A stretch of 64,000 nt of DNA, taken from the sequence record MK250029.1, one strand, 5' to 3'. Each line of letters opens with the position of its first letter. The stretch's first letter is position 1. Position numbers and translations under genes: made by a program. Positions 59,826 to 63,790 of this stretch are shown here, piece after piece. The notes under the pieces are model-generated. The model was not told where the DNA came from. It saw only the letters and a list, made by a program, of their open reading frames with translations, and ran no database searches.

Positions 59826-60303
59826 ATTTTATGTTATATTAGGTTATAATACAGAAACAGAAACCTGGTATGGATATGTAGAACATTCTTTTTCTATGGG
59901 TGCAGATAAAAATAGGATTAGAACATTTTCTACATGTAGAGCAGATTATCCTTGGAAAGATAGATCATTTCCAGAGAGAAAAAGAATAGCGAAAGCATAT
60001 TTGAAGAAACATGGTTATAGATGTAATTATGCTCGTGATTATATTATAGACGCAAAGATGAATCCTAATTCACCAAATCAATGGATTTATTTTTATTTGC
60101 GAGATATTGCAGACAATCTTAATAAAAAACATTATAATAATTGTCATTGGAAAGTATATAGAGTAAATTCTAAGTTTTGTCCTATTAATGTAAATATGAA
60201 TGAATATTACAAAACATTAGTAAATAAGAAATTTAGGAAGTCTCTTGACAAATTTCAATTAAGAAATCAAGAATTTTCTGTAAAGGAAGTTTCAAAAGAT
60301 TAA
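59809..60303 (+). CDS. Hypothetical protein
   Basis: 164-aa basic ORF. Confidence 0.65.
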   Translation: MKKGTKFYVILGYNTETETWYGYVEHSFSMGADKNRIRTFSTCRADYPWKDRSFPERKRIAKAYLKKHGYRCNYARDYIIDAKMNPNSPNQWIYFYLRDIADNLNKKHYNNCHWKVYRVNSKFCPINVNMNEYYKTLVNKKFRKSLDKFQLRNQEFSVKEVSKD

Positions 60304-60310
60304 AAATATA

Positions 60311-60565
60311 TCGGTATGGCTCTAAAGGAGAGAGCATCATTTATGACTAATGATGACGAAGATTTGTTCGTAAGTTAATCTTTACTAAGAGAATATACAA
60401 TATTTAGTTATATAGAAGTAATTTAATTGTTATAATGCGAAGACAATTTTATATGAAACTATATATGTCATTTATGAGATTATAGTGAAGAATAGCATTT
60501 ACAGTAACTATAATAAGATGATATAAACAATATAACTTCTGTGGTTCGATTCCACACGTACTGAC
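60311..60565 (+). ncRNA. tRNA-like RNA with ~185-nt variable region (nominal anticodon TGA)
   Basis: Acceptor TCGGTATG/CGTACTGA, D arm GCTC-TAAAGGAGA-GAGC, stem TCATT-TATGACT-AATGA, T arm TGTGG-TTCGATT-CCACA. Confidence 0.65.
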
Positions 60566-60583
60566 TAATAAACATATAACATT

Positions 60584-60802
60584 ATGAAAGAAGAAATTAA
60601 ATTCTTAGGTAAAACACCGAGAGAAATTGCAGAACGTTACTTCAATAAATCATATGAAGGTAAAGAACGATATGATATTTTAGTTGAAGGCTTTATTGAG
60701 GGATTTAATTATCTATTTCCTCATTATGATATAGCTAATACTTTGGTTGAAACATTTGAACGAATTAAAGAATTAGAGAATAAAGAGAAAAAAGATTCAT
60801 AA
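60584..60802 (+). CDS. Hypothetical protein
   Basis: 72-aa ORF between ncRNAs. Confidence 0.6.
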   Translation: MKEEIKFLGKTPREIAERYFNKSYEGKERYDILVEGFIEGFNYLFPHYDIANTLVETFERIKELENKEKKDS

Positions 60803-60829
60803 TTATTTTTTTAATTGAAATAAAATATG

Positions 60830-60837
60830 TATCTTTG
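60830..60837 (+). promoter_or_regulatory. Bacteroidetes-type -7 promoter upstream of a noncoding cluster
   Basis: ttttttaattgaaataaaatatgTATCTTTGt; no long ORF follows for over 1 kb. Confidence 0.7.
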
Positions 60838-60849
60838 TATTGTAAATAA

Positions 60850-61165
60850 TGAACACCTATAAGTGTTAAGTAACATAGGTATGGAAACCCTACGGTTCGT
60901 AAGTAGTAATATCGAATAGTCCGCATAATAGGAACATGTCATTATTTTAACATTTATATAAGAATATACTACATGTCTTATATGAGCGTCAGGAGTATTG
61001 TAACAGAGTCGACGTGTTTACATTTTTAGAGGCGCAGCTTTTAAATCTGACTATTCTACGTAAAGTAGTGTTCTATGTAAAGTAGTGAAGTGCAAGATAC
61101 GGCGTCAGTACAAGTCTATATAATAAGTTGCAAATAAAAATAGAAACTGTTAAAATTCGTATCTA
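60850..61165 (+). ncRNA. Putative structured ncRNA, family unknown
   Basis: GC-elevated, no long ORF, several hairpins, tandem 17-mer ttcta(c/t)gtaaagtagtg (61054-61087). Confidence 0.4.
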
Positions 61166-61169
61166 ATTT

Positions 61170-61340
61170 GTCTGTATTTCACAATGGTTAATGAGGTACA
61201 TGAAAAGTGATTTGGAAGAATCATTATAGATATATATGATTAAGATAACGTTCAACTAAGCTATAGAATAATAGTAAGTACAGCGCTGAAAATATATGTT
61301 TATATGTATTGCGGTTGTGGTTCGATTCCACATACAGACA
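61170..61340 (+). ncRNA. tRNA-like RNA with expanded anticodon and variable arms
   Basis: Perfect acceptor GTCTGTA/TACAGAC + A73, D loop with GG (CAATGGTTAA), T arm TGTGG-TTCGATT-CCACA; 171 nt. Confidence 0.65.
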
Positions 61341-61562
61341 CGACTTATTAATGATGAAAAGTCTGCACTTAACAAAATATAAAAAACATTTTAATGTACT
61401 GTTGATTATATGTTTTAATTTTGTTAACTAAGAGATTCTTGTAAATTATAAAAATTTACAAATCGAGGGGAACGCATAACGGCAATTATGTTAGTACTTG
61501 GCGTTTAATGAAATGAATATGTATATTTGCCGATGTGCATATGAGTGACATTAAATGATAAA

Positions 61563-61655
61563 ATTATAATAGTGTAGCGGTTCGCACGCCCGTTGGTAAA
61601 ACGGGAAGGGTTTATGTTTGAAAGCATATTAGGGGTTCGACTCCCGCTTATAAAC
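61563..61655 (+). tRNA. Degenerate class II tRNA, nominal Tyr(GTA)
   Basis: D stem GTGT/GCAC, anticodon stem CCCGT-TGGTAAA-ACGGG, variable hairpin, GGG-TTCGACT-CCC; G33, weak T stem, 6-bp all-AT acceptor. Confidence 0.45.
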
Positions 61656-61942
61656 AATTAAATTACATAATGTTCTCACGAAGAGCGAGCATCGGAAGGT
61701 GAGCAATTTAGAAAGATATTTAAGAGTGATCATATTAAATTGATTTCTAACAGAAATACGGTGACGTAGGAGCTGAAAAAGAACAAACGTATGGTAATGT
61801 TAACATTATGTATTTTTAAAAAATTTTATTTTTTTCCACACAGACTTTGATACATTTTTTGTATCATATATTATATTTAATTTTGAAGTTAAATCAGATG
61901 CTTGTGATAAGTATCTGATTTTTTTAATTCATAAAAAATATG

Positions 61943-61950
61943 TATCTTTG
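61943..61950 (+). promoter_or_regulatory. Bacteroidetes-type -7 promoter upstream of nadR-pnuC
   Basis: tttttaattcataaaaaatatgTATCTTTGt. Confidence 0.7.
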
Positions 61951-61980
61951 TAATATATTAAATAATAATTAAATAATTAA

Positions 61981-63141
61981 ATGATTAAGAATATAGGAAT
62001 TTGTTTTGGTGGTTATTGTCCTATGCATCAGGGACATCTTGACCTTATAATGAAAGCAAAGAAAGAAAATGATATTTGTTATGTGGTTGTTTGTGGTTAT
62101 ACAGATGAACCACGTGGTAATGAATTAGGTCTTAATATTAATAATAGAAAAAGACTTATTAAAGAGTTTTTTAAAAATGATGAACTTATTCGAGTTCTTA
62201 CTGTAAATGATACAGAATTAGGTATTGATGAAAGTATGTCTGAACATAATTGGAAAGTATGGACAGATTATGTAAAATATCAAATTACAGATGATCTTTG
62301 GGGTGGTGGTCCGACATATCCATTTAGTCCAGATGAAAGGATTGAAGCGCATGAATTGAAACTTACATTCTATGTTGGTGAAAAGTTCTATGTTGAATCA
62401 TTGAATAAATTAAATATTAATGCAGTGTTAGTTGGTTACGATGAGAATTCACCATCTAATAGAAGTAATGATATATCAGCAACATATATTAGGCAAAATC
62501 CTCAATATTATTGGGATAAGATTGTATCAACATTTAAACCTGCATTAACAAAGAAAATTCTTGTATTAGGTACAGCATCAGAAGGAAAATCAACACTTGT
62601 TAAAGATATTGGTAATTATTTTAATATACCATATACAACAGAATTCGGTAGAGATTATATGGAGAAACATTGTATGTTAGATCCTGATATTACTGTAAAT
62701 GATTTTGTTGAATTCCTTATTGGACAGAGACAATACTATTTTGATGCTTTGAATGATAAAGGAAATAAGGGTGTTATCATTTCAGATACTGATAATCTCG
62801 TTACACTTATGTATGCAAAAGCATATGTATCTGATAATAATATGCAAATTACTGAAGATGAATATAACAATATATTGAAACCACTTGCAAAATCATTACA
62901 AACAGGTGTTTCATGGGATGTAATTTATCTTATCAAACCGCATAATAAATTTGTTGATGATGGAACACGTTACATGAATCAATCTTCAATAGATGAGAGA
63001 ATGAAGAATTATAAAATTCTTTTATCATTACTTGAAGAGTTCGGTTTACTTGATAAGGTAATTGAATTGAATGGTTCTTATATGGATCATTTTAATTATG
63101 TTAAGGATTATATCACAAAATTATATGATAAAGAAAATTAA
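61981..63141 (+). CDS. nadR: NadR-type NMN adenylyltransferase / nicotinamide riboside kinase
   Basis: FGGYCPMHQGH (HxGH), SATYIR, then P-loop LGTASEGKST, EFGRDY, SDTD, FVDDGTR. Confidence 0.92.
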   Translation: MIKNIGICFGGYCPMHQGHLDLIMKAKKENDICYVVVCGYTDEPRGNELGLNINNRKRLIKEFFKNDELIRVLTVNDTELGIDESMSEHNWKVWTDYVKYQITDDLWGGGPTYPFSPDERIEAHELKLTFYVGEKFYVESLNKLNINAVLVGYDENSPSNRSNDISATYIRQNPQYYWDKIVSTFKPALTKKILVLGTASEGKSTLVKDIGNYFNIPYTTEFGRDYMEKHCMLDPDITVNDFVEFLIGQRQYYFDALNDKGNKGVIISDTDNLVTLMYAKAYVSDNNMQITEDEYNNILKPLAKSLQTGVSWDVIYLIKPHNKFVDDGTRYMNQSSIDERMKNYKILLSLLEEFGLLDKVIELNGSYMDHFNYVKDYITKLYDKEN

Positions 63142-63790
63142 TAATATATTATATTCAGAGTTTATAGAAGGAAGAAATATTAATGAACATTTGTTTATGC
63201 TCATTGGTATTTTCCTTCAATTAATTGCATGGTATATAACTAAAGATTCATTGATTTCTTTAATATCTGGTGTAACTGGTATTATATCTGTTATATTATG
63301 TTCACAAAGAAAGATTTCATTTTATTTCTTCGGCTTTATACAATTAGGAACATATATGTATCTTGCATGGCAGCAAAGATTTTATGGTGAATTAATAGAG
63401 AATGTATTTTATATTATTACTATGTTAATAGGTATTGTAGTATGGTTAAAAAATTACAATACAGAAGAGCAAATAGTAGAATCTAAAAGACTTTCTGATA
63501 GGTTATTCTATATAATATGTAGTATAATGGTGTTTATCTGTGTATTATTTGGTTATTATATGAAATACTTTACAGATAATACACAACCATTTATGGATTC
63601 ATTTTCAACAGTACCTGCATTTATAGCGCAGACATTGTTAATGTTACGATATAGAGAACAATGGATATTCTGGATTATAATTGATGTTGTTTCTATATTC
63701 ATGTGGATGTTTGCTGATAATTGGATAATGGTTATTCAATTTATATTTTGGACAATGAATTGCATATATGGTTATAGAAAATGGAAATAA
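63125..63790 (+). CDS. pnuC: PnuC nicotinamide riboside/vitamin transporter
   Basis: Multi-TM; ISGVTGIISVIL, PFMDSFST..AQ.L...RYREQW.FWIIID; start taken at ATG 63125, overlapping the nadR stop. Confidence 0.92.
   Translation: MIKKINNILYSEFIEGRNINEHLFMLIGIFLQLIAWYITKDSLISLISGVTGIISVILCSQRKISFYFFGFIQLGTYMYLAWQQRFYGELIENVFYIITMLIGIVVWLKNYNTEEQIVESKRLSDRLFYIICSIMVFICVLFGYYMKYFTDNTQPFMDSFSTVPAFIAQTLLMLRYREQWIFWIIIDVVSIFMWMFADNWIMVIQFIFWTMNCIYGYRKWK

What the first reader, a model, noticed from the sequence alone, without database searches (positions are those of the whole stretch)
61170..61340. Second tRNA mimic, with the anticodon loop replaced by a ~75-nt domain and an identical T arm
Perfect 7-bp acceptor and A73. 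A GTAC/GTAC helix closes a large insert where the anticodon loop should be, followed by a long variable arm. The T arm (TGTGGTTCGATTCCACA) is identical to that of 60311-60565. With the 490-nt RNA, this makes three RNAs that keep the acceptor/T 'top half' and replace different parts of the 'bottom half', suggesting a family of phage tRNA-like scaffolds processed by RNase P/CCA enzymes.
Basis: partly seen in the sequence, partly recalled or inferred. Interest (0 to 1): 0.7.

Follow-up and report, generated by a model that had tools for sequence, protein, structure and literature searches.

The report
tRNA-shaped phage RNA without anticodon loop
A gut megaphage (Prevotella phage Lak-C1) carries a conserved, unannotated gene for an RNA that has every part of a transfer RNA except the anticodon loop, which is replaced by a folded 106-base insert; the gene is real, but it is still open whether the insert is spliced out or the RNA works as a tRNA look-alike.

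Summary
The window is the end of Prevotella phage Lak-C1 (MK250029.1). Positions 61170-61340 really are tRNA-shaped. They have a perfect 7-bp acceptor stem, A73, U8, a D loop with GG, and a canonical T arm identical to the one at 60540-60556.

The stem that closes the insert is GGTAC (61195-99) with GTATT (61306-10), not GTAC/GTAC. This leaves an ordinary 5-nt variable loop (class I) and a 106-nt insert in place of the 7-nt anticodon loop.

The baboon Lak-B phages keep the same cloverleaf. Four of 7 acceptor pairs and 3 of 5 T-stem pairs are changed on both sides, but the insert there is only 32 nt. No single cut position gives the same anticodon in both lineages.

The insert is single-copy. 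It fails a covariance model of the published Lak "tRNA introns", and it matches no Rfam family. The element lies inside a conserved, structured noncoding unit of about 1.1 kb, running from a promoter to a terminator.

My best reading is a non-decoding tRNA-shaped module, handled by RNase P and the CCA enzyme (confidence 0.45). The main rival is an unusual intron-bearing tRNA, most likely Phe-GAA (0.3). Metatranscriptome contigs show only the unspliced form, and contigs cannot rule out a spliced one.

The parts
60830..60837 (+). Bacteroidetes-type -7 promoter box TATCTTTG. It lies inside a promoter cassette (about 60804-60849) that is repeated about 15 times per Lak genome. It is the likely start of the noncoding transcription unit.
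   Evidence: Sequence read. There are 14-15 matching places per Lak-A/C record and 12 per Lak-B record. Many contigs branch at 60804-60849 and there is a depth spike at 60757-60843. That this box is a promoter is inferred from the known Bacteroidetes TAnnTTTG consensus and was not tested.
60846..61169 (+). Structured noncoding 5' domain of about 324 nt, directly upstream of the tRNA-shaped element. A closing helix AGATACG/CGTATCT ends 5 nt before 61170.
   Evidence: RNAalifold on Lak-C1/A1/A2/B1/B4 predicts 70 pairs, 11 of them kept through changes on both sides. No Rfam match.
61170..61176 (+). Acceptor stem, 5' strand (GTCTGTA). The expected RNase P cut is at 61169|61170, and base -1 is T.
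   Evidence: In Lak-B, 4 of 7 pairs are changed on both sides and all stay paired.
61177..61194 (+). U8-N9 and the D arm. The stem is a weak 3-bp TCA/TGA, and a different 3 bp pair in Lak-B. The loop carries A14, A15 and G18G19. The block AATGGTTAATGAGGTA is identical between Lak-C1 and Lak-B.
   Evidence: The only polymorphism is 61189 T/C, at the variable position 20a.
61195..61201 (+). Anticodon stem, 5' strand: GGTAC plus a 2-bp extension (AT). It pairs with 61304-61310.
   Evidence: The stem is 7 bp in both lineages, and the sixth pair changes from A-T to C-G in Lak-B.
61200..61305 (+). 106-nt insert in place of the 7-nt anticodon loop. It contains the joiner GAAA 61202-05, hairpin H1 61206-25 (GGAA tetraloop), and helix H2 61226-37/61292-303 stacked on the anticodon stem. 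An irregular inner hairpin lies at 61243-87.
   Evidence: Constrained and free folds. The isolated arm has z = -2.6. Substitutions 61229 G>A, 61231 T>C and 61292 A>G all keep the H2 pairs, and the other changes lie in loops or bulges. The insert is single-copy in the genome.
61306..61315 (+). Anticodon stem 3' strand GTATT plus the 5-nt variable loop GCGGT. T61315 can form the Levitt pair with A15. The block is identical in Lak-B.
61316..61332 (+). T arm TGTGG-TTCGATT-CCACA, identical to 60540-60556.
   Evidence: The polymorphism 61326 T/A sits at the variable position 59. In Lak-B, 3 of 5 stem pairs are changed on both sides if one bulged C is allowed.
61333..61340 (+). Acceptor stem 3' strand TACAGAC and discriminator A73. 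No CCA is encoded.
61342..61363 (+). Hairpin GACTT...AAGTC, starting two bases after the discriminator.
   Evidence: In Lak-B it reads TCCTT...AAGGA, so two pairs are changed on both sides. z = -3.1.
61563..61655 (+). Second tRNA-shaped gene of the same unit. It is class II and Tyr-like, with anticodon GTA here and ATA in Lak-B.
   Evidence: ARAGORN. It scores below the Rfam tRNA threshold. The anticodon stem and variable arm covary between Lak-C1 and Lak-B.
61891..61921 (+). Intrinsic terminator (14-bp stem followed by a T run) that ends the noncoding unit.
   Evidence: 2 terminator-like sites found against 0.2 expected.
60312..60564 (+). The 253-nt element that shares the T arm. Its acceptor is CGGTATG/CGTACTG with two G-U pairs, followed by A73. 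It has a 7-bp anticodon-like stem CATCATT/AATGATG.
   Evidence: This is context only and was not analysed in depth.

Best explanation
61170-61340 encodes a non-decoding, tRNA-shaped RNA module.

It keeps everything that the tRNA-handling machinery reads: the acceptor stem, discriminator A73, the D-loop/T-loop elbow, the variable loop and the anticodon stem. The anticodon stem is prolonged to 7 bp, and the loop is replaced by a structured extension that differs between lineages. In Lak-A/C this is a three-way junction of 106 nt. In Lak-B it is a hairpin plus a purine-rich strand, 32 nt in all.

The module is transcribed as part of a noncoding unit of about 1.1 kb, running from the promoter box at 60830 to the terminator at 61921. 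In that unit it sits between a structured 324-nt domain and a second tRNA-shaped RNA.

Inferred mechanism:
- RNase P cuts at 61169|61170.
- The 3' end is trimmed after A61340 and CCA is added; the phage has its own CCA enzyme.
- This both releases the flanking RNAs (tRNA punctuation) and yields a stable L-shaped RNA of about 174 nt.
- That RNA cannot read a codon, because its would-be anticodon bases are paired.

Shown: the anatomy, its conservation and covariation, and its context. Inferred: the processing, the lack of splicing and the function.
For: 1. The cloverleaf is conserved through compensatory change between Lak-A/C and Lak-B. In the acceptor stem, 4 of 7 pairs are changed on both sides with none broken. 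In the T stem it is 3 of 5. The sixth pair of the prolonged anticodon stem changes from A-T to C-G.
2. The D-loop block (16 nt) and the anticodon-3'/variable-loop block (10 nt) are identical between lineages that are 74% identical across this locus.
3. Polymorphisms in the tRNA-like part fall only at positions 20a and 59, the freely variable positions of real tRNAs.
4. No anticodon loop is conserved. The first and last 7 nt of the insert differ between lineages. The same anticodon (GAA) is obtained only by cutting at different positions: after nt 36-38 in Lak-C1, and at 33|34 in Lak-B.
5. In both lineages the ends of the insert pair with each other, so the stem runs on rather than opening into a loop.
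6. No insert-free allele turned up in 15 GenBank Lak genomes, 6 Lak loci carrying the element in IMG/VR (4 Lak-B, 2 Lak-A/C), 3 metagenome contigs, or 4 further runs from 3 studies.
7. The insert is single-copy and is not a member of the published mobile intron family.
8. The T stem is imperfect in most Lak-B genomes, which an elongator tRNA would tolerate poorly.
9. The element is embedded in a conserved structured noncoding unit. The 5' domain has 11 covarying pairs and the downstream hairpin also covaries.
10. Contigs from three metatranscriptome libraries run straight through the unspliced element.
11. There is precedent for tRNAs covalently embedded in large ornate phage RNAs: the GOLLD linker region (10.1101/2024.12.08.627333).
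Against: - No read-level RNA data were available. The 5' and 3' ends, CCA addition and absence of splicing are all untested, and contigs drop rare or short forms.
- Other tRNAs of the same phage do carry large inserts next to the anticodon, and these were called introns (PMC6784885).
- The insert begins with a canonical-looking loop, ATGAAAA (U33, GAA, A37). Deleting 99 nt gives a cloverleaf that ARAGORN accepts at its default threshold.
- The phage encodes several Rnl2-family RNA ligases that could join halves.
- Only two deep lineages exist, so the covariation counts are small.
- The strict conservation of the core suggests a specific partner that I cannot name.
Confidence: 0.45

Rival explanations
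1. It is a precursor of a real decoding tRNA, most likely tRNA-Phe(GAA) with loop ATGAA+AT or ATGAAAA. A 99-nt intervening sequence would be removed by an unknown endonuclease and joined by a phage or host RNA ligase. That would make it a fifth, unlisted case of the 'enigmatic introns' of Lak tRNAs.
For: - Lak tRNAs Tyr, Gly, Phe and Thr carry 79-141-nt inserts next to the anticodon.
- After removal of the insert, ARAGORN calls a tRNA at its default threshold in both lineages. GAA is reachable in both.
- The insert starts with a 5' hairpin and ends with a long closing helix that abuts the 3' exon. This loosely resembles the hairpin-plus-minihelix layout of the published introns.
- The phage has Rnl2-family ligases and a CCA enzyme.
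- A73 fits Phe.
Against: - Splice positions would have to differ between Lak-C1 (after nt 36-38) and Lak-B (33|34) to give the same anticodon. With the 36|37 rule of the published introns, Lak-C1 gives GAA but Lak-B gives AAT.
- The covariance model of the published intron family gives only 14 bits, E about 0.16, and that score is driven by the outer T arm.
- No insert-free allele is known, unlike Thr and Gly.
- There is no bulge-helix-bulge. The phage has no splicing endonuclease and no RtcB.
- At 99 nt the insert is far too short for a group I intron, and there is no Rfam hit.
- The Lak-C1 record already has a tRNA-Phe(GAA) gene at 460477-460630.
- The T stem is defective in most Lak-B genomes.
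- RNA-library contigs show only the unspliced form (weak evidence).
Confidence: 0.3
2. One reading: a GTAC/GTAC helix closes a domain of about 75 nt, followed by a long (class II-like) variable arm.
For: The two GTAC words exist at 61196-99 and 61278-81. In Lak-A1 the second reads GTAT, which still allows a G-U pair.
Against: - This fold is 3.5 kcal/mol worse, and its pairs have probability 0.008 against 0.18-0.67 for GGTAC/GTATT.
- Lak-B has no second GTAC and no such arm, yet conserves GTATTGCGGT exactly.
- Free folds of the arm choose GGTACAT/ATGTATT.
Confidence: 0.03
3. It is a dead tRNA gene disrupted by an insertion. It would be kept only because nothing removes it, and it would have no function.
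For: - It scores below the Rfam tRNA threshold (18.4 vs 29 bits).
- The D stem is weak, there is no nucleotide 26, and the T stem is imperfect in Lak-B.
- Devoto et al. list several 'pseudo' tRNAs in these genomes.
Against: - Seven stem pairs changed on both sides without breaking between lineages.
- Two core blocks are perfectly conserved.
- Within-clade changes are confined to loops or to pair-preserving substitutions.
- Synteny is conserved inside a structured, promoter-driven noncoding unit.
Confidence: 0.07

Closest known systems
Lak megaphage tRNAs with 'enigmatic introns' (Devoto et al. 2019, PMC6784885)
   Same: Same genomes. A tRNA cloverleaf is interrupted at the anticodon loop by about 80-140 nt. 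No Rfam family matches. The insert begins with a small hairpin.
   Different: - The published inserts sit exactly between nt 36 and 37.
- They carry an AAATTAAAC spacer and an inner acceptor/T-arm minihelix whose discriminator abuts A37.
- They are near-identical across cohorts, and Thr and Gly have insert-free alleles.
- The insert here has none of these features. It fails the family's covariance model, its ends pair to prolong the anticodon stem, and the gene is absent from the paper's tRNA and intron tables.
tRNAs embedded in large ornate phage RNAs (GOLLD linker region; ROOL and GOLLD near tRNA islands)
   Same: A tRNA-shaped unit is covalently embedded in a long, conserved, highly structured phage noncoding RNA.
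   Different: No match to the GOLLD or ROOL models of Rfam. The tRNAs in GOLLD are ordinary tRNAs, whereas this one lacks an anticodon loop.
tRNA-like processing signals (MALAT1 mascRNA; mitochondrial tRNA punctuation)
   Same: A cloverleaf whose acceptor/T/elbow is kept while the anticodon region is free to vary. It is placed directly after a long noncoding RNA, whose 3' end RNase P would create. (Basis: general knowledge.)
   Different: Those are eukaryotic. Here the anticodon arm is enlarged rather than reduced, and the core is conserved more strictly than a mere cut site would need. Processing was not tested.
tmRNA tRNA-like domain
   Same: An acceptor/T-arm top half, with a long helix leaving from the anticodon-stem position.
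   Different: There is no G3-U70, no tag reading frame and no Rfam match. The phage's true tmRNA is elsewhere, at record 182229-182625, with 49.4 bits.
Bacterial Y-RNA-like YrlA, partner of Ro/Rsr
   Same: A tRNA mimic joined to a long helix, and known from phages (PMC7824862).
   Different: YrlA is permuted, with its ends in the long stem, and it needs a TROVE protein. Lak has no TROVE gene and there is no Rfam match.
Classical tRNA introns (group I in bacteria; bulge-helix-bulge in archaea)
   Same: The interruption lies in the anticodon loop.
   Different: At 99 nt the insert is too short for group I, and no group I model matches. The ends form a continuous helix rather than two 3-nt bulges. 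There is no splicing endonuclease or RtcB in the phage.

Membership tests
Canonical tRNA (Rfam RF00005) | 7-bp acceptor stem with a discriminator base | tested here: met
   7 Watson-Crick pairs plus A73. The stem covaries with Lak-B.
Canonical tRNA (Rfam RF00005) | T arm with G53-T54-T55-C56-R57-A58...C61, and a D loop with G18G19 | tested here: met
   TGTGG-TTCGATT-CCACA, and a D loop with GG.
Canonical tRNA (Rfam RF00005) | 7-nt anticodon loop on a 5-bp stem | tested here: not met
   106 nt lie between the stem strands, and the stem continues to 7 bp.
Canonical tRNA (Rfam RF00005) | Score at or above the family's gathering threshold | tested here: not met
   18.4 bits against a threshold of 29, and only the minihelix part aligns. 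The element is absent from the RF00005 scan of the whole record at E <= 0.1.
Lak tRNA intron family (Devoto 2019) | 5' (T)TACA hairpin, AAATTAAAC spacer, and an inner acceptor/T-arm minihelix | tested here: not met
   Covariance model R1, built from 5 published introns, recovers the 3 copies present in the Lak-C1 genome at 65-98 bits. It gives 14.3 bits (E 0.16) here, and that score comes from the outer T arm.
Lak tRNA intron family (Devoto 2019) | Insertion exactly between nt 36 and 37, with the 3' exon starting at A37 | tested here: inconclusive
   A 36|37 cut is possible in Lak-C1 (loop ATGAA+AT). In Lak-B the same rule gives a different anticodon, AAT.
Lak tRNA intron family (Devoto 2019) | Presence/absence polymorphism (insert-free alleles exist) | tested here: not met
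   None was found in any Lak genome, contig or run examined.
Group I intron in a tRNA | Catalytic core P3-P9 (at least about 200 nt), U at the 5' splice site, terminal G | tested here: not met
   The insert is 99-106 nt. There is no Rfam match even at E <= 10. The only G-terminated cut would need C, not U, at the 5' exon end.
Archaeal/eukaryal tRNA intron | Bulge-helix-bulge at the exon-intron junctions, plus a splicing endonuclease | tested here: not met
   The junctions form a continuous helix with one A-A mismatch. No PF01974 and no RtcB in Lak-C1; PF01974 was also absent from Lak-B1.
tmRNA | G3-U70, a tag reading frame, pseudoknots, and a match to RF00023 | tested here: not met
   Pair 3-70 is C-G. 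There is no ARAGORN or Rfam tmRNA call here. The true tmRNA was found elsewhere.
YrlA / Y RNA-like | A Ro-binding stem formed by the RNA ends, plus a TROVE partner protein | tested here: not met
   The ends lie in the acceptor stem. No TROVE gene in Lak-C1 or Lak-B1. No Rfam match.
GOLLD / ROOL | A match to the family covariance models | tested here: not met
   No match at the gathering threshold in the 64-kb window, and none at E <= 10 in 60200-62000.
RNase P / CCA-enzyme substrate (works like a tRNA precursor) | Cleavage at -1|+1 and CCA addition at the discriminator | not testable with these tools
   Only the sequence prerequisites are seen: acceptor/T stack, elbow, T at -1, and no encoded CCA. 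Contigs cannot show RNA ends.

The most novel reading that the evidence does not exclude
Lak megaphages make a small family of 'tRNA-handled' RNAs. The tRNA top half and elbow would serve as a handle for RNase P, the phage CCA enzyme and perhaps a synthetase or EF-Tu. The anticodon arm would be rebuilt into a functional domain. This would be an RNA class distinct from tmRNA, YrlA and intron-bearing tRNAs, possibly used in translation takeover or as a counter to tRNA-directed host defence. The candidate members are the 171-nt element, the 253-nt element at 60312-60564 and the Tyr-like RNA at 61563-61655. All three are produced from, or next to, one structured noncoding unit.
Probability: 0.25. 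Interest if true: 0.75.

Novelty: new variant of a known kind. Interest (0 to 1): 0.5.

Why it matters
Lak phages are among the largest phages of the human and animal gut. They recode TAG and carry about 30 tRNAs, a tmRNA, RF2 and a CCA enzyme, so they clearly remodel translation.

This is a conserved tRNA-shaped RNA that cannot decode, lying in a conserved 1.1-kb structured RNA unit. It is missing from the published tRNA and intron lists. It adds a new item to the phage's RNA toolkit.

It also gives a concrete, testable case for how phages reuse the tRNA fold: as a processing signal, a scaffold, a decoy or a caged tRNA. If the insert is spliced instead, that would point to an unknown bacterial or phage tRNA-splicing pathway, which would be at least as interesting.

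Tried and rejected
- **Rfam.** I scanned the whole window at the gathering threshold, then 60200-62000 and 60840-61345 at E <= 10. Nothing relevant appeared.
- **ARAGORN intron mode.** It finds the right stems, but only at the lowered threshold (-ps90), which gives 8-18 false hits per shuffled genome. Its choice of anticodon is unreliable, because it also mis-assigns the published Gly, Tyr and Phe cases.
- **RNA evidence.** Only Logan contigs were on offer. The four runs laid (three of them labelled RNA) show the unspliced sequence with no joint in 61170-61340. This says nothing firm about splicing or RNA ends.
- **Search for an insert-free or third-lineage allele.** A 16-mer scan of IMG/VR gave 4 Lak-B copies plus chance hits. 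A 22-mer scan of metagenome contigs gave 2 Lak-B copies and 1 Lak-A-like copy. Searching with the neighbouring NadR-like protein added two more Lak-A/C copies. The more distant relatives (43-50% identity) have a coding gene upstream of the NadR gene where Lak-A/B/C have this RNA unit.
- **Paralogy.** The insert has no paralogue in the genome. The tRNA-like part is not a close copy of any of the 30 canonical Lak tRNAs.
- **Automatic alignment.** A MAFFT alignment of Lak-C1 with Lak-B across the insert was wrong, so I counted pairs from explicit coordinates in a script instead.
- **Enzymes for splicing.** No RtcB in Lak-C1. No TROVE and no splicing endonuclease in Lak-C1 or Lak-B1.
- **Neighbouring proteins.** These are DUF4407, several hypotheticals, a NadR-like protein and PnuC. 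None has an RNA-related domain.
- **The shared 8-mer TGGAAGAA.** It occurs in the inserts of both Lak-C1 and Lak-B. I considered it as a tRNA 3'-end or T-box-like pairing site, but found no convincing partner and dropped it as over-reading.
- **Whole genome.** I rebuilt the genome from record pieces outside the window plus the window itself. No masked stretch was looked up.

Full report
**Origin.** Window 60200-62000 is 100% identical to Prevotella phage Lak-C1 (MK250029.1, 536417-538217). It is 97% identical to Lak-A1/A2 and about 74% identical, in pieces, to the baboon Lak-B genomes. Window position p equals record position p + 476217, so the window is the last 64 kb of the record. Lak phages are 540-550-kb megaphages that read TAG as Gln. 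[quoted passage not shown]

**What the sequence shows.**
- Acceptor stem: GTCTGTA (61170-76) pairs perfectly with TACAGAC (61333-39), and A61340 is the discriminator.
- T61177 is U8.
- The D region (61179-94) has only a 3-bp stem, but a normal loop with A14, A15 and G18G19.
- GGTAC (61195-99) pairs with GTATT (61306-10).
- GCGGT (61311-15) is a 5-nt variable loop.
- TGTGG-TTCGATT-CCACA (61316-32) is a textbook T arm.
- Where the 7-nt anticodon loop should be, there are 106 nt (61200-61305).
- ARAGORN in intron mode finds exactly these stems.
- The T arm is identical over 17 nt to that of the 253-nt element at 60312-60564.

With acceptor, D and T stems enforced, that fold is 3.5 kcal/mol worse than the GGTAC/GTATT fold (-31.4 vs -34.9). 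Its pairs have probability 0.008, against 0.18 for the outermost pair and 0.59-0.67 for the other four pairs of GGTAC/GTATT. Free folding of the whole element and of the isolated arm also chooses GGTACAT/ATGTATT. Lak-B has no second GTAC, yet keeps GTATTGCGGT letter for letter.

**Fold of the insert.**
- The anticodon stem runs on for two more pairs, giving 7 bp.
- A GAAA joiner follows.
- Hairpin H1 (61206-25) has a GGAA tetraloop.
- A 12-bp helix H2 (61226-37 with 61292-303) abuts the 3' strand of the stem and can stack on it.
- H2 encloses an irregular hairpin.
- The isolated arm has z = -2.6, with 3 of 200 shuffles folding as well.
- Six Lak-A/C-type copies differ at 8 sites. Two of these are in the tRNA-like part, at positions 20a and 59, which vary freely in all tRNAs.
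- Three are substitutions in H2 that all keep a pair (G-U to A-U, U-G to C-G, U-A to U-G).
- The other three changes are a one-base bulge and two loop positions.
- The same variants appear in contigs from dog, wastewater and other gut runs.

**Is it real?**
- Pattern matches alone are weak evidence. I estimate about a 14% chance that a perfect 7-bp partner lies within 460 nt of any T arm in DNA of this composition.
- ARAGORN's intron mode at the lowered threshold (-ps90) gives 8-18 hits per shuffled genome.
- The comparative evidence is strong. The Lak-B orthologue is 98 nt and lies in the same place, between the same conserved flanks.
- Its acceptor stem is GGTTATG/CATAACC. Four of 7 pairs are changed on both sides and none is broken.
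- Three of 5 T-stem pairs are changed on both sides if one bulged C is allowed.
- The anticodon stem is kept (C-G becomes U-G), and its sixth pair changes from A-T to C-G.
- By contrast, the D-loop block of 16 nt and the GTATTGCGGT block are identical.
- When the insert is cut down to 7 nt, ARAGORN at its default threshold calls a tRNA for all 8 cut positions in Lak-C1 and for 6 of 8 in Lak-B.
- A dead gene would not behave this way.

**Is it a tRNA with an intron?**
- The published Lak cases make this the obvious rival, so I characterised them first. Comparing the insert-free Thr gene of Lak-C1 with the interrupted Thr gene of Lak-A2 places the insert exactly between nt 36 and 37. The Gly, Phe and Tyr cases fit the same rule, and their 3' exons start with AA.
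- These inserts are one family. They share a (T)TACA hairpin, an AAATTAAAC spacer, and an inner acceptor/T-arm minihelix whose discriminator abuts A37.
- A covariance model of the family recovers its three copies in the Lak-C1 genome at 65-98 bits and finds nothing else. On 61170-61340 it gives 14 bits (E about 0.16), and that score comes from the outer T arm.
- The insert here is single-copy and its two ends pair with each other, which the published introns do not do.
- The gene is absent from the paper's tRNA table and intron table.
- No insert-free allele appeared in any Lak genome, IMG/VR or metagenome contig, or run examined.
- Most telling, the two lineages share no anticodon loop. Lak-C1 offers ATGAAAA at the 5' end of the insert and TTTATAT at the 3' end. 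Lak-B offers CTAATTG and AAGAAAG. GAA can be had in both only by cutting at different places, and the 36|37 rule gives GAA in Lak-C1 but AAT in Lak-B.
- The phage has no RtcB. Neither lineage checked (Lak-C1, Lak-B1) has a splicing endonuclease or a Ro/TROVE protein.
- It does have several Rnl2-family ligases and a CCA enzyme.
- Ninety-nine nucleotides is too short for a group I intron, and no Rfam model matches.
- Contigs of three metatranscriptome libraries and one further library run through the element unspliced, with no joint. Contigs cannot exclude a short spliced product, so splicing is disfavoured but not refuted.

**Context.**
- A Bacteroidetes-type -7 box (TATCTTTG, 60830-37) lies in a cassette that recurs 12-15 times per Lak genome.
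- A strong intrinsic terminator lies at 61891-921.
- Everything between them is noncoding and aligns with Lak-B along its whole length.
- The 324 nt upstream of the element form a consensus structure in which 11 of 70 pairs are kept through double changes.
- A hairpin two bases after the discriminator also covaries.
- A second odd tRNA-shaped gene follows at 61563-655. It is class II, with anticodon GTA in Lak-A/C but ATA in Lak-B.
- Neighbouring proteins are DUF4407, hypotheticals, a NadR-like protein and PnuC. None is RNA-related.
- Large ornate phage RNAs with covalently embedded tRNAs are known for GOLLD. This unit matches neither the GOLLD nor the ROOL model.

**Interpretation.** The parts of a tRNA that are read by RNase P, the CCA enzyme and other elbow/acceptor binders are under clear selection. 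The part that reads codons is absent and variable, and the element sits between other structured RNAs. I therefore favour a non-decoding tRNA-shaped module. It would be cut out by the tRNA-processing enzymes, which would also release its neighbours, and it would persist as an L-shaped RNA with an enlarged anticodon arm (confidence 0.45). An unconventional intron-bearing tRNA, probably Phe-GAA, remains a serious rival (0.3). The function beyond processing is unknown. The strictly conserved core and the TGGAAGAA word shared by both inserts hint at a specific partner.

**Novelty and score.** Interrupted tRNAs in Lak phages and tRNA-like RNAs in general are both known. This gene is unlisted, its insert belongs to no described family, and a prolonged anticodon stem ending in a three-way junction is a new variant. 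Interest is 0.5. It would rise if RNA data show either a stable 174-nt tRNA-shaped RNA or a new splicing route.

Noticed in passing
L046:2229-2625 (-), which is Lak-C1 record 182229-182625, outside the window: The phage encodes a tmRNA. It matches Rfam RF00023 at 49.4 bits (threshold 47) and has G3-U70. ARAGORN reads the tag peptide as DDEIDFRMAA*. The term 'tmRNA' does not occur in the main text of Crisci 2021 or Iyer 2021; I did not search Devoto 2019 for it.
   Followed up: partly
L032:250-336, L031:224-316(-), L060:513-591(-), L062:175-288(-), L063:144-284: All published Lak 'tRNA introns' lie exactly between nt 36 and 37. They form one family: a (T)TACA hairpin, an AAATTAAAC spacer, and an inner acceptor/T-arm minihelix. 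In Gly, Phe and Thr the discriminator of the inner minihelix directly abuts A37 of the host tRNA; in Tyr one extra T intervenes. An RNase Z-type cut after that discriminator would therefore free the 3' half precisely. This points to a processing-based excision route.
   Followed up: partly
Lak-C1 record 462048-462284 (-), in L060: Another oversized tRNA-shaped gene of 237 nt. Its acceptor is GGTTGTA/TACAACC and it has a canonical T arm. ARAGORN calls Val(tac) with a 142-nt insert. I did not find it in the parts of the published intron and tRNA tables that I read.
   Followed up: no
Lak-C1 record 460477-460630 (-), in L060: The interrupted tRNA-Phe(GAA) that supplementary Table S6 describes as 'not found in C1 genome' is present in MK250029.1. 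Its inner T loop differs by one base.
   Followed up: partly
window 60804-60849: A promoter cassette with the Bacteroidetes -7 box TATCTTTG. It is repeated 12-15 times per Lak genome, and contigs of all four runs branch here.
   Followed up: partly
window 60846-61169: A structured noncoding RNA domain of 324 nt with 11 covarying pairs between Lak-A/C and Lak-B. It matches no Rfam family.
   Followed up: partly
window 61563-61655: A Tyr-like class II tRNA-shaped gene. It has an A1-A72 mismatch and a T stem with only 3 good pairs. The anticodon is GTA in Lak-A/C and ATA in Lak-B, while the anticodon stem and variable arm covary. It scores below the Rfam tRNA threshold and is absent from the published Lak-C1 tRNA table.
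   Followed up: partly
window 60312-60564: The 253-nt element that shares the T arm also has a 7-bp anticodon-like stem, CATCATT/AATGATG, with loop TATGACT. It carries roughly 150 nt of extra sequence between that arm and the T arm. Only its 3' 120 nt align with Lak-B.
   Followed up: no
window 61656-61830: The 3' part of the noncoding unit holds further blocks that are conserved with Lak-B. Examples are TTCTCACGAAGAGCGAG ... GAAGGTGAGCAA (CTCAC/GTGAG could pair), ACGTAGGAGCTG and AACGTATGGTAA.
   Followed up: no
window 61981-63790: A NadR-like NMN adenylyltransferase/kinase and a PnuC transporter lie directly downstream. This is an NAD salvage pair. In more distant relatives (43-50% identity) a coding gene lies upstream of the NadR gene where Lak-A/B/C have the RNA unit.
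   Followed up: partly
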